From IMG/VR virus record IMGVR_UViG_3300035698_007246, positions 124,001 to 188,000 of that record: a stretch of DNA of 64,000 bases; one strand, written 5' to 3'. Positions 18,802 to 41,835 of this stretch are shown piece by piece; position 1 is the first letter of the stretch, and every line of letters starts with the position of its first letter. A program made the translations under genes and the position numbers. The notes under the pieces were generated by a model that did not search any database, was not told the origin of the DNA, and saw only the letters and a program-made list of their open reading frames with translations.

Positions 18802-18947
18802 AAAAAGAAGTAAACAAATTGATATTACCATTTGGTAGAAAATGTAAGATTTGAACTTACACATATTGCTTTTGAGGCAATTGCTCAACCATTGAGCTTA
18901 TTTTCCGATAGGAAATTTGCTGTAATCAATCTTCATTACTTCTTTTT
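18802..18947 (-). ncRNA. clamp element C enclosing an intact tRNA
   Basis: 12-bp P1 AAAAAGAAGTAA/TTACTTCTTTTT plus clamp consensus. Confidence 0.78.
18833..18906 (-). tRNA. tRNA with CAA anticodon and short variable loop (type I)
   Basis: GGAAAAT/ATTTTCT-A-CCA; ATTGC-CTCAAAA-GCAAT; 4-nt variable loop. Confidence 0.8.
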
Positions 18948-20266: not shown

Positions 20267-20448
20267 AGGAACAAATACAAATTGAATTTGTGATTTAAAG
20301 TCTCACAGACCTGAGTTATTTAAGCTCTCCAGCTATTTGTCTCGGATTTGAACCAAGTAAAATCAGGTGTTGCCACCAGATTTGTTAACCAGTTGTAGAT
20401 ACTTGCGTATCAGCTTTGTTTGCAGTAACCAATTTTCAATTTGCCCCT
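20267..20448 (-). ncRNA. clamp element D with T-loop/elbow-like domain
   Basis: P1 AGGGGCAAAT/ATTTGTTCCT; variant clamp; CTTGG-TTCAAAT-CCGAG. Confidence 0.68.
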
Positions 20449-21221: not shown

Positions 21222-21408
21222 AAAAAGAGATACACAGATTGATGTTTTTAAAGTTTATCGTGCTCTCAGCAGACTGAGCTACCTCCCTGCTTAAACATCT
21301 CTCAAGATATCTAAGCAGGGAGGGTGGGATTCCAACCCACGACCACGGCATTATCAGTGCTTTTTAAAAGTTGTATTTTGCAGAAGTCAATCTTCCGTAT
21401 CTCTTTTT
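21222..21408 (-). ncRNA. clamp element E with circularly permuted tRNA-Ile(GAT)
   Basis: 3' half 21316-21360 precedes 5' half 21259-21288; join CG|GCA gives CGGCA-CTGATAA-TGCCG. Confidence 0.82.
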
Positions 21409-21420
21409 ATGTATTTAAAA

Positions 21421-21525
21421 GTAGTCCTCAAATTGTACTTTGCTCCCTGAGCAGTTATCCCCCATCATAGACACTCCTAAGAATGCCGATGGTGGGGGAT
21501 AACGGAATCGAACCGTTGAGTTTTG
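21421..21525 (-). ncRNA. permuted tRNA-like element with internal CCA
   Basis: AACGG-TTCGATT-CCGTT-ATCCCCC-A-CCA, hairpin linker, then GGGGGAT and TGCTC-AGG-GAGCA. Confidence 0.6.
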
Positions 21526-21629
21526 TTTGCTTTAGCTTTCCACAAGTTTGATTTAGTCACACCTGCGTAGTTTGTAATCTTTTCCATTAATCAACATTTC
21601 CTTCAATTAAGTTAAAAATACTTATTTTT

Positions 21630-21794
21630 AATAGTCTTTATGGAGTGATTTACAAATTGATATTATTCGTCGCTCTGCCAACTGAGCTACCCCTGCATAT
21701 TGAGAGCAGGGGACGAGAATCGAACTCGTGACCCACGGCTTGGAATGCTAAGATTGCTGTAATCAATCTTCAAAATCACTCTATAAAGACTATT
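21630..21794 (-). ncRNA. clamp element F with circularly permuted tRNA-Gly(TCC)
   Basis: 22-nt P1; 3' half 21705-21748 precedes 5' half 21668-21696; join ACG|GC gives ACGGC-ATTCCAA-GCCGT; U73. Confidence 0.85.
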
Positions 21795-21879: not shown

Positions 21880-21884
21880 ATATA

Positions 21885-21965
21885 AGGAACACAATTTGAT
21901 TTTTAGCTACCTTTGTATTTAAAACAAATGCTTTTTTTGTTTGCTGAATTCAAACTTCAGTTCCC
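21885..21965 (-). ncRNA. clamp element G (minimal)
   Basis: Compensatory TTTGA/TCAAA; insert TTTGT-TTTAAAT-ACAAA. Confidence 0.72.
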
Positions 21966-21974
21966 ATGATTTAT

Positions 21975-22437: not shown

Positions 22438-22530
22438 AAATCGCAACTCAGATTGATGTAAAGCGGTTAAACTTTTCAATAGTTTTGGAAACCTTTTTAG
22501 ATTGCTGAAATCAATCTTCAGTTGCGATTT
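22438..22530 (-). ncRNA. clamp element I (minimal)
   Basis: P1 AAATCGCAAC/GTTGCGATTT; insert AAACT-ATTGAAA-AGTTT. Confidence 0.75.
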
Positions 22531-24644: not shown

Positions 24645-24974
24645 TTATTTCATTTTTATTTTATTTCTGATAAGAAGCTCACATAATTTATTTCTTAATT
24701 CCTGAATCTGAATCCTATCAAGTTTTTCTTCTGTATAAAATGTCATTGTTGTTTCATGAACAATATTTATTGCAGCCATATCTCGTTGTTGTTGTTGTTG
24801 TTGTTGTTGTTTCACTAACACTGTATTATATTTACAACCACGAAACCTACTATAAAAACAACACCCATCCAAATTTCTTTTACTAAGGCTTTTGTTTTTA
24901 CATTTATCAAATACAGTTAAAGGACATTCCTTTAATTCTGTACCAACAAATATTCTTTTAATATATTTAAACAT
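24645..24974 (-). CDS. hypothetical protein with poly-Gln tract
   Basis: (CAA)8 run at about 24785-24811. Confidence 0.55.
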   Translation of the reverse strand: MFKYIKRIFVGTELKECPLTVFDKCKNKSLSKRNLDGCCFYSRFRGCKYNTVLVKQQQQQQQQRDMAAINIVHETTMTFYTEEKLDRIQIQELRNKLCELLIRNKIKMK

Positions 24975-24991
24975 AAAAACCTTTCAAAATA

Positions 24992-25090
24992 TGTTGGCTG
25001 ATAGATTTGAACTATCATCTGCACCTTTAACGATGCTATCATCCTTAAGGATAAGACACCTTGTCATGTTACTAATTACACCAAGCCAAC
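24992..25090 (-). ncRNA. tRNA-like RNA with extra hairpins
   Basis: GTTGGCT/AGCCAAC acceptor, D and T arms, three internal hairpins. Confidence 0.55.
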
Positions 25091-25097
25091 TTTAAAA

Positions 25098-25173
25098 TGG
25101 AGCCGAAGGAGGGATTTAAACCCCCAACATCCCGATTACAAATCGGGTGCTCTGTCAATTGAGCTACTACGGC
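25098..25173 (-). tRNA. tRNA-Thr(TGT)
   Basis: Cloverleaf, loop TTTGTAA, CCA. Confidence 0.88.
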
Positions 25174-25185
25174 ATAATTTAAATT

Positions 25186-25251
25186 TGGGGTGACCGAGGA
25201 GGCTCGACAGGAACCACAATCCTGTGTTCTACCAGTTGAACTACAGTCACC
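25186..25251 (-). tRNA. T-armless tRNA-His(GTG)
   Basis: G-1, C73, CCA, perfect D and anticodon arms; only TCGAGCCTCCT between anticodon and acceptor stems. Confidence 0.65.
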
Positions 25252-25259
25252 ATATATTA

Positions 25260-25559
25260 CTAAAAGTCATTGTATTCTTCACAATCCCTATCATGGAGTA
25301 TGTTTTCCCATTGTGCTAAAGCATATAATGTACGATTACATTCATCTTCAGTAAATTGTACAGTAATAGAACCTTTATCACCATCAGCAAAATGTTTCAG
25401 GGTGTCATCAACTGTATACTCAACAACAGGACTATTCCCACATTTTTTCATAAGGTCATATCGCCCTTTCCAGTATTTAACTTCTGATTGAAGAGCTTTA
25501 ATTTTAATTTCATCTGTTATAACTATATCTTGTTTTGAGTCATCACTCGATTTTGACAT
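25260..25559 (-). CDS. hypothetical protein
   Basis: Start trimmed to MSKSSDD. Confidence 0.5.
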   Translation of the reverse strand: MSKSSDDSKQDIVITDEIKIKALQSEVKYWKGRYDLMKKCGNSPVVEYTVDDTLKHFADGDKGSITVQFTEDECNRTLYALAQWENILHDRDCEEYNDF

Positions 25560-25599
25560 TTTTCTTTCATAATATCTCCTTAAACAATTTAACACCCTT

Positions 25600-25628
25600 A
25601 ATATAATTTGTGACACTATGGATGTCAA
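25600..25628 (-). promoter_or_regulatory. sigma70-like early promoter
   Basis: TTGACA-17-TATATT. Confidence 0.75.
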
Positions 25629-25651
25629 TAGTTATTTTTTAAAAAAGAATT

Positions 25652-25727
25652 TGGTGCCGCCTCTCGGAATCGAACCGAGTTATTCCGGGCTTCAGCCGGG
25701 TGCATTGACCACAATTGCTTAAACGGC
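25652..25727 (-). tRNA. tRNA-Phe(GAA)
   Basis: Cloverleaf, loop CTGAAGC, CCA. Confidence 0.85.
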
Positions 25728-25737
25728 ATATATTTTA

Positions 25738-25820
25738 TGGTGGAAAGGATAGGAGTCGAACCTACACAGAATTAACGGGTGTTTTACAGACACTTGGGTT
25801 CACCAATACCCAGCCTTTCC
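25738..25820 (-). tRNA. tRNA-Tyr(GTA)
   Basis: Loop CTGTAAA, variable arm, CCA. Confidence 0.9.
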
Positions 25821-25824
25821 ATAT

Positions 25825-26319
25825 TTATTTTTCTACATCACCTAAATTTTCAAAGAACTTTTTTGCATATTTATTAACATCATCTAAAATATGTGTCCTA
25901 TACCTGCTATGCCAATAACTATGATGTGTTGGACATAATGGTATTAAATTTTCTGGTTTATTATTTTTACTATCACCATCATAATGATGAACTTCAACAA
26001 TTTTATCTTCATCACAAATAATACATTTCTTTTTATGATAAACAAAACATGTTGTTCGATATGCACAATCTTTCCAATTTGGATGATTAGTACCAGTTCT
26101 AAAATATGTGTTTGCACAACCACAAGAACATGTTGTGCCAGTTTTAAAATTTTTAATTGGTTTATTACAAACCGGACATAATTTTAAATTTTTTGGATTT
26201 AAATAACAACTCTCTTCATGTCTTGATAAATTAGCAACAACCCGCTCCTCTTTACACCATCGACATTTTTGTTTTTTAGTACTTCCAAGTTTTAAATTTT
26301 GTAATGAATTGCTATGCAT
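25825..26319 (-). CDS. HNH homing endonuclease
   Basis: KKCIICDE..IVEVHHYDG...NLIPLCPTHH. Confidence 0.88.
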   Translation of the reverse strand: MHSNSLQNLKLGSTKKQKCRWCKEERVVANLSRHEESCYLNPKNLKLCPVCNKPIKNFKTGTTCSCGCANTYFRTGTNHPNWKDCAYRTTCFVYHKKKCIICDEDKIVEVHHYDGDSKNNKPENLIPLCPTHHSYWHSRYRTHILDDVNKYAKKFFENLGDVEK

Positions 26320-26398
26320 AATACCTCCTTATAGATTCATATAAAATTATTTATACAAATTCCATGCAAGGTATTTGGAAAACAGCCAAATCACATAA

Positions 26399-26474
26399 TC
26401 GAGCGAGGAGGATTCGAACCTCCGACAACCCTGAATCCAAATCAGGTAGGCTAACCAGACTGCCCCACCGCTCG
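26399..26474 (-). tRNA. tRNA-Pro(TGG)
   Basis: CGAGCGG acceptor, loop TTTGGAT. Confidence 0.9.
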
Positions 26475-26504
26475 TTATATTTAACCAAAAAATTTCAAAG
26501 AACA

Positions 26505-26589
26505 TGGTACTGAAGGTGGGATTTGAACCCACACGCCCAAAGGACACCTGATTCTAAGTCAGGCACGTCTTCCATTTCATCACTCCAGC
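26505..26589 (-). tRNA. tRNA-Leu(TAG)
   Basis: Type II, loop CTTAGAA, CCA. Confidence 0.9.
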
Positions 26590-26668
26590 ATTAAATGAAT
26601 GTTGTTTAACTGGTACAACAATCAAAACCTTGATTGACCCTCACACAAAGGTAAAGGCTCTAAACGAC

Positions 26669-26702
26669 AAAAAGGGCTTCTAAGTTTAGTTAGAAGCCCT
26701 TT
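26669..26702 (-). terminator. rho-independent terminator
   Basis: AAGGGCTTCTAA-loop-TTAGAAGCCCTT followed by T-tract on minus strand. Confidence 0.75.
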
Positions 26703-26934
26703 CATCTATATAATATGAATTTCCTTCTAACTACAAACCACTCCACTCAGGTGTTCTCGCTGAATAATCATTATGGAGTTTAAAAATTGGATACAATATG
26801 CCCATTCCGTTGTTAAGCGTACAATCACATAGTGTTTGTTTAAATGTATTTTGCATAATATTCCCTTCAATTTGTTAAAATTAATTCATCTTATAACTAT
26901 TTATATAAATTATTTTCAAAATAGTCTCTTTTTA

Positions 26935-38163: not shown

Positions 38164-41100
38164 TTAAGCCCCACATCCAGAATATCCACAATCATTACAA
38201 ACAAAACATCCACTTTGCATAGCAATACTATCACTTTTACATGTAGGACATATCATTCCGACTATTGTTGTACCATTATCAATTGTTTCAGATACAAATT
38301 TTCTAATTGCAGTTAATAATGTTGATACATTGTCGCCTTCAATACCTTGTAATGAAACAAGAATATCTTGTCGTGCTATGTTATGTCTCAAACAAAGACT
38401 AACCATTCTACCCAATCTATTTGCATTAGTATCACCAAGGCATTTGTCCCAGGTGTCTTCTACAATCTTAACACTAATTCCACAGTCAATAGCAAGCACA
38501 CATAAACTTTTACAAGCCTTAGTACATGCTCTTGTATCATTTTTAGAATTTGTGTTAATCCACAGTGCCATTGGATACTTCATATCAACATCATCAGGGA
38601 AGTAACTGAAATTAATGTAGAATTTCATCCCTTCACGTTTAATCGTCCTTGTAGGGCCGTTAATGAAGGTCTCAGGGAGTTTTACGCCCTTCTTTATGAT
38701 AGTTTTTTCCTCTTCAGCACTTTCAATCTTAGAAAGAACGGATTCCATAGAACCTGTACGGTATGTTGTTACACCAATGAGTCCTTTTTTCCATGCTTCA
38801 AAATATAATTCTTTAAATTTTTCAAATGAATATTTATTTGGTAAATTTATTGTTTTCGAAACAGACTGATTACAGTAATATTGAACTACTTCTTGAATGT
38901 TAAGATGGTCTTCAATTTCCAAATCATCTGTTGTGACCAAGAAATCAGCTTTCTTATGTTCTGGATAATTTTCAAGAATCCAAGCATAACCATAATCACA
39001 AAGCGTATACATTTCACACAAACCTCTATTATGCGGTTCGTAGTAATATTTTGTTCCTTCATAGTATCCCTCCCAGTAAGTAAAATCCTTTTTCTTTTTT
39101 TCTTTAAGGATTGTTTTTACATTATCGGAATTCATGCCTTCAGGAAAAGCACATATCACTTTTCTCTCAGATTTCAAATCAAACACAGGTTCAATTCCAT
39201 TTGATACATTATCACACACCACAGATGAATTACCTAATGGTGGATTGGTTGTGGTTTTAGCATTTCTGAGACCATATTGTTTAATTAATTCTTTTGTTTC
39301 ATCTGTTAATCTATCAGATTTGAAATAAGGTGTCTGACTAAATAAATCATAATTGTATAATGGGAATGACCCTTTTTCTTTAGCCAATAATGCACTTGAT
39401 TGCATTGTAATGTTTTCCTTAAGTTGTTTAATTTTTTTAGTAAACGTAACAGCTTCTTGTGAGTTATATTTAATACCCAACATAACCAATGTAGAACCTA
39501 ATCCATTAATACCCATACCAAACTGTCTTAGATTTTCTACAGCCCATGCATATGATGGTAATGGCAATTCAGTCAAATCACACACATTATCTAACATTCT
39601 TGAGTATGTAACGATGTCTTTTTTATACAATTCCAAATTAAAGTATGGAACATCATTACGGATTTCTACATACATTGTCAAATTAAGTGAACCTAATAGA
39701 CACACAGTAGACATTATTGGATTACCTGGTATCTCACCACATCCTCGACTCACATACCCTTCGGTATTCCAATCATCAGCAGTTGGTTCATGCAAATCAT
39801 AAACATCACCAAATCCAAGAAATTCAATTTCTTTTATTTTAGTTTTCCACTTATTTCCTGTTAATGATGTAGTTTTGATAATTTGTTTTAATTTTTCATT
39901 TTTTTCATCATGACTAAGTTTATGTACAAATTTATAAAAATTTAAAATTGAATCATTATCAATAACACCTTCAAAGATATCATGCCGCCTCACAACATCA
40001 CGTCCATATATTTTTGCTGTCTCACCTTTTTTACCACACAAATATTTCTTATAATCACACCCTGCGGTAAGCATTATATGTTTTACCAATAAATGTAATT
40101 TTTCTGATATATTTTTAAATCTAACTTGTGGATATCGAGAAGTTAAATTCACATTCCCATCAGATGAAATTAACCCATCTATCAATCCAGATAAAAAATC
40201 ATCATTAAAGTTTAACAATTTCATAACATCAAAATTGGATTTATCATTAGCATCAATACCGAAAACATCAAATAATAGTTTAATCTTCCCTTCGGTATTT
40301 ATAGCATAATATCTCTCACAATTTCCATCAGATTTATCGATTCTATAATCAAAACCAAACCTGTTATACAATTCAATTATATAATCATTATTTTCATTTG
40401 AATCTGTTGATATATTAAAGTTTTTATAATTAGAAAAACATCCATCTCCAAAATATAATCCAAATAACATTCCAACATCTCTGATGTCGAATAGTTGCTC
40501 GCCATTTATAGCATCAACAGATATTACGCCATTATCCACACATGATGGATTATACTTAATCATATCATAAGGTTGTTTTCTTACGTTATCACCAACATTT
40601 AAATATTTTAAACGTGTGTTATTGTCCCACCGTTTTCTATTTTCTGATGTTCCATTTTGAGTATGAAAAATATGACCTTCAGTTACACCCTGATAAAACC
40701 CATCTGTGAAATGAACTCTATAAATTGGCTGATTTTCATGAACTTCTATATTATCAACACTACCATGCCCTAACGTTGTTTGAATTTCTTCACCGACTTT
40801 TACATCTTCAACTCGTTTTAGTCCGTGTTTAGTAGCTACTAATGTTCCTTTTACAACACAAGGATTTGTAGCATTACATTCACCCAAATAGAGAATTGGG
40901 TTGTTTTTATTCATGTTATCAACGAATACTATACCCGGTTCAGAGCGATTGTATGTAGATTTCATAATAAGGTCGTAAAGTTTCTTAGCTTTCACACGTT
41001 TTACTACTTTACCATTCCATATTAAGTCCCACATAGCATTATCAGCAACAGCATTCATGAAATCATCACTCACTGCAACACTCATGTTGAATTTAGTTAG

Positions 41101-41835
41101 CTTACCAGACTCTTGTTTTGCTCTAATGAACTCTTCAATGTCAGGGTGCCATACAGAAAGACATCCCATCATAGCACCTTTACGTATATCTTTATCACAT
41201 TCACCAAAATATTCTTTAAGCTCTTCAACAGAAGCATAGTTTTTTAATGAATCAAGGTATCCATCATTGTCACCTTTAACAATACAGTCAGAAACCTTGT
41301 CCCAAATCTCCATATAAGAGATAACTCCGGGGTGTCTAACACCAGTTCCTTTGATTAAACTACCACGAGGTCGTATAAAGTCAAAGTTTATTCCATACCC
41401 ACCCTCGGAAGCAAGAGTTTTTGCTTGTTCCATGATAGATAAGAAGATGTTTACGAGTTCATCTGGTGTATCAGGTGTAGTGATTATTATTTCATTCTTG
41501 AAATGTTCATTCTGTCTTATGTATTTTATAATGGCATTACTAACAGGACCATTAATAAAACAGTTCATTAGTGTAGCATTGTAATAATCAGTTCCTATAT
41601 TGGTTGTAATTCTACCACCCGGTGAACATTTAATACCTAATGGATTCCCCATACTATCAAAACGTATCATTGTTTCAAGAAAAATGGGATACCAATATTC
41701 AGAATCTACTTCATTATTAGCAAGTGCCCTTGCTATTCTTTCAAATGTCCCAAGGGGGGTCTCACCATCATACTGATATTTTCCCTTCCAATTATTATAT
41801 GCAATTTTCGTTTTGAAAAAGTTTTCATCACGCAT
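38164..41835 (-). CDS. nrdJ: class II (B12-dependent) ribonucleotide reductase with intein
   Basis: PGGR, NCF, GGYG.NF..IRPRG, GAMM, NP|CGE, SNGIEP, QSVSKTIN, C-terminal Zn ribbon. Confidence 0.92.
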   Translation of the reverse strand: MRDENFFKTKIAYNNWKGKYQYDGETPLGTFERIARALANNEVDSEYWYPIFLETMIRFDSMGNPLGIKCSPGGRITTNIGTDYYNATLMNCFINGPVSNAIIKYIRQNEHFKNEIIITTPDTPDELVNIFLSIMEQAKTLASEGGYGINFDFIRPRGSLIKGTGVRHPGVISYMEIWDKVSDCIVKGDNDGYLDSLKNYASVEELKEYFGECDKDIRKGAMMGCLSVWHPDIEEFIRAKQESGKLTKFNMSVAVSDDFMNAVADNAMWDLIWNGKVVKRVKAKKLYDLIMKSTYNRSEPGIVFVDNMNKNNPILYLGECNATNPCVVKGTLVATKHGLKRVEDVKVGEEIQTTLGHGSVDNIEVHENQPIYRVHFTDGFYQGVTEGHIFHTQNGTSENRKRWDNNTRLKYLNVGDNVRKQPYDMIKYNPSCVDNGVISVDAINGEQLFDIRDVGMLFGLYFGDGCFSNYKNFNISTDSNENNDYIIELYNRFGFDYRIDKSDGNCERYYAINTEGKIKLLFDVFGIDANDKSNFDVMKLLNFNDDFLSGLIDGLISSDGNVNLTSRYPQVRFKNISEKLHLLVKHIMLTAGCDYKKYLCGKKGETAKIYGRDVVRRHDIFEGVIDNDSILNFYKFVHKLSHDEKNEKLKQIIKTTSLTGNKWKTKIKEIEFLGFGDVYDLHEPTADDWNTEGYVSRGCGEIPGNPIMSTVCLLGSLNLTMYVEIRNDVPYFNLELYKKDIVTYSRMLDNVCDLTELPLPSYAWAVENLRQFGMGINGLGSTLVMLGIKYNSQEAVTFTKKIKQLKENITMQSSALLAKEKGSFPLYNYDLFSQTPYFKSDRLTDETKELIKQYGLRNAKTTTNPPLGNSSVVCDNVSNGIEPVFDLKSERKVICAFPEGMNSDNVKTILKEKKKKDFTYWEGYYEGTKYYYEPHNRGLCEMYTLCDYGYAWILENYPEHKKADFLVTTDDLEIEDHLNIQEVVQYYCNQSVSKTINLPNKYSFEKFKELYFEAWKKGLIGVTTYRTGSMESVLSKIESAEEEKTIIKKGVKLPETFINGPTRTIKREGMKFYINFSYFPDDVDMKYPMALWINTNSKNDTRACTKACKSLCVLAIDCGISVKIVEDTWDKCLGDTNANRLGRMVSLCLRHNIARQDILVSLQGIEGDNVSTLLTAIRKFVSETIDNGTTIVGMICPTCKSDSIAMQSGCFVCNDCGYSGCGA
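39742..40860 (-). mobile_element. LAGLIDADG intein in nrdJ (373 aa) ending in Gly
   Basis: Starts CVVKGTLV after NP; LIDGLISSDG; ends YVSRG before CGE. Confidence 0.85.

What the first reader, a model, noticed from the sequence alone, without database searches (positions are those of the whole stretch)
21421..21525. Permuted T-arm/acceptor module with internal CCA between clamps E and F
A perfect T arm and ATCCCCC-A-CCA precede a hairpin linker and then GGGGGAT, a perfect 7-bp acceptor partner. The layout recalls two-piece tmRNA but there is no G3:U70. It ends in AATTTGA, resembling a clamp 3' arm, although I found no matching 5' P1.
Basis: partly seen in the sequence, partly recalled or inferred. 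Interest (0 to 1): 0.6.

Follow-up and report, generated by a model that had tools for sequence, protein, structure and literature searches.

The report
Orphan tRNA-mimic among phage Y-like RNAs
The element is a real, circularly permuted tRNA-like module on the minus strand of a salt-lake jumbo phage. It is best read as a diverged, clamp-less copy of a multi-copy family of Y-RNA-like tRNA mimics that travel with a phage Ro60-like protein, and it is not a tmRNA.

Summary
A perfect T arm (21517-21501) is followed by ATCCCCC, A and CCA, then a 26-nt hairpin linker, GGGGGAT and a small D-like hairpin.

The module sits between two stronger relatives, C (21644-21780) and A (21226-21404). These belong to a family I modelled as R1: a tRNA-like body in YrlA topology (T arm, closed acceptor, D arm) held inside a long clamp helix with conserved 5' and 3' motifs. 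Covariation is strong (91% of cells paired, 25 of 31 pairs with double changes, 0 of 500 shuffles as good).

The family occurs many times per genome in tRNA arrays of several otherwise unrelated phages. The only protein that this phage shares with all four fully compared clamp phages is a 485-aa DUF2828/DUF7788 protein. Its predicted fold matches Ro60 best, and in the other phages its gene lies directly beside the clamp RNAs. The phage also encodes RtcB.

An internal N-CCA is a family trait (6 of 22 cores; NCC in 10 of 22). M. smegmatis YrlA is a precedent for RNase P cleavage and a CCA end.

B has lost the clamp motifs (22 bits against 95-120) but keeps an intact core. The tmRNA and decoding-tRNA readings fail their membership tests. 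No RNA data exist.

The parts
21541..21551 (-). Candidate 5' arm of a B-specific closing helix (TCAAA-C-TTGTG)
   Evidence: Used in the MFE fold, but the duplex with 21428-21437 is no better than shuffled flanks. Weak.
21525..21531 (-). AGCAAAC, remnant of the family's conserved single-stranded NCAGCAA motif
   Evidence: Best local alignment of B is to a canonical family member, L033:2708-2827, 38 of 45 identical from this motif through the acceptor. The CM alignment places it on the motif.
21501..21517 (-). T arm, 5-bp stem and TTCGATT loop
   Evidence: Sequence. Matched by Rfam beta_tmRNA and by R1. Two double (compensatory) changes in the stem relative to the closest homologue.
21490..21500 (-). 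Acceptor 3' strand ATCCCCC, discriminator A, CCA
   Evidence: Sequence. N-CCA recurs in 6 of 22 distinct family cores and NCC in 10 of 22.
21464..21489 (-). Linker forming a 7-bp hairpin that extends the acceptor helix
   Evidence: Fold. Similar extension hairpins occur in element A and in L053:1501-1700.
21457..21463 (-). Acceptor 5' strand GGGGGAT; predicted RNase P +1 at 21463
   Evidence: 7/7 Watson-Crick pairs with 21494-21500. Cleavage is inferred only.
21438..21454 (-). Shortened D-like arm (GCUC-AGG-GAGC, or a 3-bp stem with a 7-nt GG loop)
   Evidence: CM alignment and MFE.
21428..21437 (-). TACAATTTGA, diverged copy of the family 3' clamp motif TCAATYTGT
21644..21780 (-). Neighbour C: canonical clamp-enclosed tRNA-like RNA
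   Evidence: R1 120.6 bits. Rfam YrlA 36.7 bits, below the threshold of 69.
21226..21404 (-). Neighbour A: canonical clamp-enclosed tRNA-like RNA with a long acceptor hairpin
   Evidence: R1 95.5 bits. Rfam YrlA 30.7 bits over the full model.
17117..17260 (-). Element D: a further canonical family member
   Evidence: R1 112.4 bits.

Best explanation
B is a diverged paralogue of a phage family of Y-RNA-like tRNA mimics.

In canonical members, a tRNA body lacking an anticodon loop (T arm, acceptor stem closed by a loop, D arm) sits inside a long helix made by the two flanks. That helix has a conserved inner segment and an adjacent NCAGCAA motif. I infer that this helix is the docking site of the phage's Ro60-like DUF2828 protein, by analogy with the way Y RNA stems dock Ro60.

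B is co-transcribed with the minus-strand tRNA array (inferred). It keeps the tRNA-like body, has lost the docking helix, and carries a 7-bp acceptor followed by A-CCA and a hairpin linker.

The most likely fate is recognition by tRNA enzymes: RNase P at G21463 and 3' trimming back to CCA. That would give either a two-piece tRNA mimic held together by the acceptor helix or simply a processing point between elements C and A. Whether B still acts with the Ro-like protein is doubtful.
For: Shown:
- The permuted tRNA-like anatomy.
- B lies between two high-scoring family members.
- B's 5' half is 38/45 identical to a canonical member of a related phage fragment, with two compensatory T-stem changes.
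- The family structure has strong covariation.
- The family recurs in G001-G005, G008 and G010, and next to DUF2828 genes in three more contigs.
- The only G000 ORF with homologues in all of G002-G005 is the DUF2828/DUF7788 protein, and those homologues abut the clamp RNAs.
- Its model (pLDDT 88) matches Ro60 structures first: E 1e-9, TM about 0.6, top 13 hits all Ro60/TROVE.
- PHROG 850 is annotated 'RNA-binding protein'.
- RtcB is present in the phage.
- N-CC(A) is enriched after the acceptor across the family.

From the literature:
- YrlA has this topology and lies beside rsr; M. smegmatis YrlA is cut by RNase P and gains CCA (PMC4201824).
- A Listeria phage shows abundant ncRNAs within 2 kb upstream of an Rsr-like gene (PMC12282133).
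Against: - B scores only 21-22 bits with the family model, and its inner-helix positions are unpaired.
- Its alternative closing helix is no better than chance.
- No orthologue of B was found elsewhere.
- The D loop is truncated.
- A73 and part of the CCA are predicted to pair with the leader, which may hinder RNase P.
- In this phage the Ro-like gene is about 23 kb from B, not adjacent.
- No RNA data exist: only DNA runs were found.
- Binding of any clamp RNA to the DUF2828 protein is inferred, not shown.
Confidence: 0.55

Rival explanations
1. B is a decaying, functionless copy of the family (a pseudogene of a Y-like RNA) that merely still looks like a tRNA.
For: Loss of both clamp motifs and of the inner helix. 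Truncated D loop. No orthologue found. Closing helix at chance level.
Against: The T arm and 7-bp acceptor are perfect while the flanks have diverged. There are two compensatory changes in the T stem versus the closest homologue. The inserted linker is itself a well-formed hairpin.
Confidence: 0.25
2. B is a tRNA-like punctuation signal. RNase P and 3' processing at this module separate the transcripts of elements C and A, and the module has no role of its own.
For: It sits exactly between C and A in a region with a promoter-like site upstream (22003-21975, minus strand) and no minus-strand terminator. It has a 7-bp acceptor, N-CCA and a leader ending in U, as tRNA genes do here.
Against: Other adjacent family members are separated without such a module (e.g. 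three in tandem in G003). Nothing shows that cleavage occurs.
Confidence: 0.1
3. B is a true permuted tRNA gene. The ends are joined (for instance by the phage RtcB) and the acceptor is opened by RNase P to give a decoding tRNA.
For: The 3' half lies before the 5' half with CCA encoded. RtcB is in the genome. One family member in G003 has a complete anticodon arm after the D arm (L035:1342-1486).
Against: B has no anticodon stem-loop halves and no bulge-helix-bulge-like junction. Most family members keep only about 3 bp of the anticodon stem. ARAGORN and the Rfam tRNA model do not call it.
Confidence: 0.05
4. B is the acceptor region of a two-piece (permuted) tmRNA.
For: Rfam beta_tmRNA matches positions 86-153 at 40.1 bits, including parts of the linker; tmRNA_permuted gives 27.2 bits.
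Against: Both scores are far below their gathering scores. There is G3-C70. No tag frame or pseudoknots fit in the ~55 nt before element A. ARAGORN finds no tmRNA. No SmpB in the phage. Similar linkers occur in clamp-family members.
Confidence: 0.02

Closest known systems
YrlA, the tRNA-like bacterial Y RNA (Rfam RF02553; Chen et al. 2014, PMC4201824)
   Same: Same permuted topology: T arm, acceptor-like stem closed by a loop, D arm, with the two RNA ends on the anticodon side. The neighbours A and C hit the YrlA model on exactly this core. There is genomic linkage to a Ro60-fold protein and to RtcB. M. smegmatis YrlA has a 7-bp acceptor, is cut by RNase P and carries CCA.
   Different: All scores are below Rfam's threshold and B gives no YrlA hit. 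The stem motif differs (family: UGAAG...CUGU helix plus NCAGCAA, versus GNCGAAN0-1G). The partner protein is DUF2828/DUF7788 rather than a Pfam TROVE match (none found). There are many copies per genome embedded in a tRNA array. B itself lacks the stem.
Two-piece tmRNA of beta- and alphaproteobacteria and cyanobacteria (RF01850, RF04321)
   Same: Gene order: T arm, acceptor 3' strand, CCA, intervening segment, acceptor 5' strand.
   Different: No G3:U70, no tag reading frame, no pseudoknots, no SmpB gene, and scores below threshold.
Circularly permuted tRNA genes of Cyanidioschyzon merolae and some archaea (own knowledge)
   Same: The 3' half is encoded upstream of the 5' half. The likely origin is a tandem tRNA duplication, as suggested by the N-CC(A) and the UAU leader kept in the acceptor loop.
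   Different: No anticodon arm and no bulge-helix-bulge junction. No evidence for a circular intermediate.
Putative Y RNAs of Listeria phage CKA15 (PMC12282133)
   Same: Highly transcribed non-coding regions lie just upstream of an Rsr-like gene in a phage. Listeria phage A511, another Listeria phage, carries a homologue of the DUF2828 protein.
   Different: R1 finds only a weak partial match in A511, so the RNA motif is not the same family at the sequence level.

Membership tests
YrlA / bacterial Y RNA | tRNA-like domain: T arm, loop-closed acceptor-like stem and D arm in permuted order | tested here: met
   The D arm is shortened in B.
YrlA / bacterial Y RNA | Match to RF02553 at its gathering score (69 bits) | tested here: not met
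   B gives no YrlA hit. A scores 30.7 and C 36.7 bits.
YrlA / bacterial Y RNA | Stem formed by the 5' and 3' ends carrying the GNCGAAN0-1G Ro-binding motif | tested here: not met
   The motif is absent. B's closing helix is at chance level. The family has a different conserved helix.
YrlA / bacterial Y RNA | Encoded near a Ro60 orthologue | tested here: inconclusive
   No Pfam TROVE match. A Ro60-fold DUF2828 protein is present at G000:122159-123616, about 23 kb from B on the same strand. It is directly adjacent to family members in seven other contigs.
YrlA / bacterial Y RNA | Bound by Ro60/Rsr in vivo | not testable with these tools
   Needs immunoprecipitation or gel shift.
   B scores 21-22 bits against 95-120 for canonical members, and the inner-helix pairs are flagged non-canonical.
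   38/45 identity to L033:2708-2827 from the AGCAAAC motif through the acceptor.
Two-piece tmRNA | G3:U70 alanine identity pair | tested here: not met
   G3-C70.
Two-piece tmRNA | Coding piece with resume codon, tag frame and pseudoknots | tested here: not met
   Only ~55 nt lie before element A. ARAGORN calls none. Rfam 40.1 of 84 bits, local to positions 86-153.
Two-piece tmRNA | SmpB partner | tested here: inconclusive
   None in the phage. A host SmpB cannot be excluded.
Permuted tRNA gene | Both halves of an anticodon arm and a processing junction that restores a 7-nt anticodon loop | tested here: not met
   No anticodon stem halves flank the core.

The most novel reading that the evidence does not exclude
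The CCA-bearing subset of this family, B included, is cut by host RNase P and trimmed to CCA. That would give two-piece, possibly aminoacylatable, anticodon-less tRNA mimics. With the phage Ro60-like protein and RtcB they would form a phage-encoded tRNA surveillance, repair or decoy system directed against host tRNA-targeting defences.
Probability: 0.12. Interest if true: 0.85.

Novelty: new variant of a known kind. Interest (0 to 1): 0.6.

Why it matters
Bacterial Y RNAs that mimic tRNA are known from a handful of species, and their function is still unclear.

Here a distinct Y-like RNA family appears in many copies inside phage tRNA arrays. It has strong covariation. It is linked across otherwise unrelated phages to one protein: a DUF2828/DUF7788 protein with a Ro60 fold that is present in about 690 cultured phage records.

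This assigns a likely RNA partner to a widespread protein of unknown function. It also gives tractable systems, namely Vibrio, Listeria, Escherichia, Salmonella and Mycobacterium phages, in which to ask what Ro-Y RNA particles do during infection.

B itself matters as a natural variant. It keeps the tRNA body and an encoded CCA but has lost the presumed protein-docking helix. That makes it useful for separating the two functions.

Tried and rejected
- DNA similarity search of the 681-bp region against cultured phages: no match.
- Pattern search for B-like modules in viral contigs: none.
- BLAST of B in five relatives' records: only a 14-nt chance match.
- Sequencing runs: only salt-lake DNA assemblies, identical in sequence, so there is no expression, processing or microdiversity information.
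- Pfam TROVE, SmpB and CCA-adding enzyme: absent from the phage.
- B's own closing helix: rejected as significant. In the same test element D's clamp was also not distinguished from shuffles (236 of 500), so this test is weak for AU-rich helices.
- Hammerhead, hairpin and other self-cleaving ribozymes for the clamp: considered and dropped. The motif does not fit by eye, and no Rfam family other than YrlA matched at E up to 1.
- T4 rnaC/rnaD: inspected as possible relatives. rnaC ends in a T arm but is not permuted and has no clamp.
- Literature searches for permuted tRNA in phage, DUF2828, and tRNA-like RNAs in tRNA arrays: no description of this family.
- Complex prediction: not used, because it does not handle RNA partners.

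Full report
**Setting.** The window is G000:C1:124001-188000 of a 223,879-bp IMG/VR virus record, about 91% complete. It is a distant T4-like jumbo phage: family B DNA polymerase about 30-33% identical to cyanomyovirus gp43, ribonucleotide reductase with an intein, and a Rad50-like ATPase. Near-identical DNA occurs in a dozen salt-lake metagenome runs, and no RNA run holds it. Twenty-seven tRNA genes lie on the minus strand between 1.8 and 26.6 kb.

**The observation.** The finding must be read on the minus strand.
- T arm AACGG-TTCGATT-CCGTT at 21517-21501.
- ATCCCCC at 21500-21494, A at 21493, CCA at 21492-21490.
- A 26-nt linker at 21489-21464 that folds into a 7-bp hairpin.
- GGGGGAT at 21463-21457.
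- A short D-like hairpin at 21452-21442.
- TACAATTTGA at 21437-21428.

All stated features are present, and G3 pairs with C70. A genome-wide scan for T arm plus 7/7 acceptor plus D arm finds only this element (B) and its neighbour C. The region folds with z = -4.0. Independent assemblies agree base for base.

**What surrounds it.** B lies between two elements with the same permuted order that Rfam's YrlA model matches below threshold: C at 21665-21737 (36.7 bits) and A at 21243-21369 (30.7 bits over the full model). D at 17119-17228 is weaker.

- The outer 8 bp or more differ completely between copies but stay complementary.
- Then comes a small asymmetric internal loop and a 7-bp inner helix (typically AGAUUGA with UCAAUCU).
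- This is followed on the 5' side by a conserved single-stranded NCAGCAA, and closed on the 3' side by CUGU.

Pattern searches found the same architecture in other viral contigs. On an alignment of 12 copies from five phages, 91% of cells pair and 25 of 31 pairs show changes on both sides. No shuffle out of 500 reaches any measure, and slid controls give 38-48% pairing.

The covariance model R1 built from this alignment finds the following in the window:
- C (120.6 bits), D (112.4) and A (95.5).
- A clamp around an ordinary cloverleaf tRNA at 18806-18943 (51.8).
- An 'empty' clamp at 22440-22528 (48.3).
- Weaker copies at 21883-21966, 20269-20446 and 17475-17606.

It finds 10 to 29 matches in each of five other phage records, often in tandem, and further matches in G008 and G010.

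**Where B stands in the family.** R1 scores B at only 21-22 bits. The core aligns, but the inner-helix positions are flagged as non-pairs. The best local alignment of B is to a canonical member from a fragment that probably belongs to a related phage, L033:2708-2827. Identity is 38 of 45, running from the AGCAAAC remnant of the conserved motif through the A-rich spacer, the T arm (two compensatory double changes) and the identical ATCCCCC.

So B is homologous to the family but has lost the clamp motifs. A substitute helix (21551-21541 with 21437-21428) is used in the MFE fold, but it is no better than shuffled flanks. No orthologue of B was found.

**The internal CCA is a family trait.** There are 22 distinct cores. 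In 6 of them the four bases after the acceptor 3' strand are N-CCA: B, plus members in G002, G003, G004 (two) and G005. In 10 they are N-CC. Expectations are about 0.3 and 1.4. The bases before G1 are most often UAU, like tRNA leaders here.

This fits an origin from tandem tRNA duplicates. It also makes the CCA-bearing members plausible RNase P and 3'-trimming substrates. Members with 4-nt loops cannot be processed in this way. Chen et al. showed that M. smegmatis YrlA, the one with a 7-bp acceptor, is cut by RNase P and carries CCA in vivo (PMC4201824).

**A protein partner.** I fetched the records G001-G005 and G008 (G008 only its first 40 kb of 46.8 kb) and compared all ORFs. Exactly one G000 ORF has homologues in all four otherwise unrelated clamp phages G002-G005: G000:122159-123616 (minus strand, 485 aa), just outside the window. 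In each of those phages the homologue abuts clamp RNAs:
- G002: gene 4134-5591, RNAs 3711-4140.
- G003: gene 190401-191894, RNAs 191917-192376.
- G004: gene 54079-55491, RNAs 53490-54013.
- G005: gene 24970-26430, RNAs 26403-26851.

The protein is DUF2828 plus DUF7788 and belongs to PHROG 850, 'RNA-binding protein'. It has a DxSxS motif. Its AlphaFold model (pLDDT 88, pTM 0.87) matches Ro60 structures first: Xenopus, human, Thermus phage phiLo and Deinococcus Rsr, with E down to 1e-9, TM about 0.6 and full length. Isolated vWA domains rank below these.

Three further homologues, chosen only for their long contigs, each have R1 matches in the non-coding gap directly upstream on the same strand. 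The phage also encodes RtcB at G000:114404-115531. This recalls the Salmonella rsr-yrlBA-rtcBA operon (PMC4201824, PMC7790460). Pfam's TROVE model itself finds nothing, which may explain why the link is not obvious from annotation.

Homologues of the protein occur in 693 cultured phage records. In Listeria phage CKA15, three very abundant non-coding transcripts lie within 2 kb upstream of an Rsr-like gene, and the authors suggested they may be Y RNAs (PMC12282133). R1 gives modest hits in Vibrio phage ValKK3 and only a partial one in Listeria phage A511, so the RNA motif diverges between lineages.

**Interpretation.**

Shown:
- The anatomy of B.
- Its homology to a covarying RNA family.
- The family's linkage to a Ro60-fold protein.

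Inferred:
- The clamp docks that protein.
- B is transcribed with the array. A sigma-70-like site lies at 22003-21975 on the minus strand, and there is no minus-strand terminator nearby.
- B is processed at G21463 and at the CCA.

I rank the readings as follows:
- Diverged Y-like tRNA mimic, likely processed: 0.55.
- Decaying copy: 0.25.
- Mere processing signal between C and A: 0.10.
- True permuted tRNA matured by RtcB: 0.05.
- tmRNA piece: 0.02.

**Known families.** B works like the tRNA-like domain of YrlA but fails the formal membership tests (score, stem motif). It is homologous to the new clamp family but lacks that family's defining clamp. It is not a tmRNA: no G3:U70, no coding piece, no SmpB, and sub-threshold Rfam scores. 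It is not a decoding permuted tRNA: no anticodon arm.

Noticed in passing
G000:C1:122159-123616 (minus strand; 384-1841 bases before the window start) = L179:4159-5616: A 485-aa DUF2828/DUF7788 protein with a predicted Ro60 fold. It is the only ORF shared with all four unrelated clamp-RNA phages, and in those phages it lies adjacent to the RNAs.
   Followed up: yes
G000:C1:114404-115531 (minus strand): An intact RtcB RNA ligase gene (404 aa) about 7 kb beyond the Ro-like gene. Together with the Y-like RNAs this resembles the bacterial rsr-yrl-rtcBA arrangement.
   Followed up: partly
window 18806-18943 (minus strand): A full clamp encloses an ordinary cloverleaf tRNA (18836-18906): anticodon CAA, short variable arm unlike a normal tRNA-Leu, G1-U72, encoded CCA. 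A counterpart with the same acceptor end occurs in G001 (L053:124-261).
   Followed up: partly
window 22440-22528, 21883-21966, 20269-20446, 17475-17606 (minus strand): Further clamp elements with no insert or a degenerate insert (R1 35-48 bits). 'Empty' clamps also occur in L024:4246-4322 and L017:7970-8050.
   Followed up: partly
L035:1342-1486 (= L028:2623-2763, G003): A family member that has, after the D arm, a complete 5-bp/7-nt anticodon-like arm (loop CUACAAA). It is a tRNA permuted at the variable region rather than lacking the anticodon arm.
   Followed up: no
window 9485-9560 (minus strand): A tRNA with anticodon CTA (amber suppressor, labelled Pyl by ARAGORN). Long ORFs are open under table 11, so general TAG recoding is not evident.
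   Followed up: no
window 38164-41835 (minus strand): The ribonucleotide reductase large subunit is interrupted by an intein (LAGLIDADG and Hint matches).
   Followed up: no
L024:2960-3024 (minus strand): In another phage contig a tRNA is followed 14 nt later by a sequence resembling a standard tmRNA 5' end (GGGGAT...GGTTTCGAC). ARAGORN placed the position in a called gene.
   Followed up: no
L187:1501-1619 and L189:1501-1657 (Vibrio phage ValKK3, NC_028829 195766-198037): Weak R1 matches (30-34 bits), one with a permuted T arm then D arm order. They lie 12-14 kb upstream of the phage's DUF2828 gene on the same strand.
   Followed up: partly
L032:1409-1547 (phage T4 rnaC): T4 stable RNA species 1 ends in a canonical T arm (CCGGG-TTCGAAT-CCCGG), so it has a tRNA-like 3' end. 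It is not permuted and has no clamp.
   Followed up: partly
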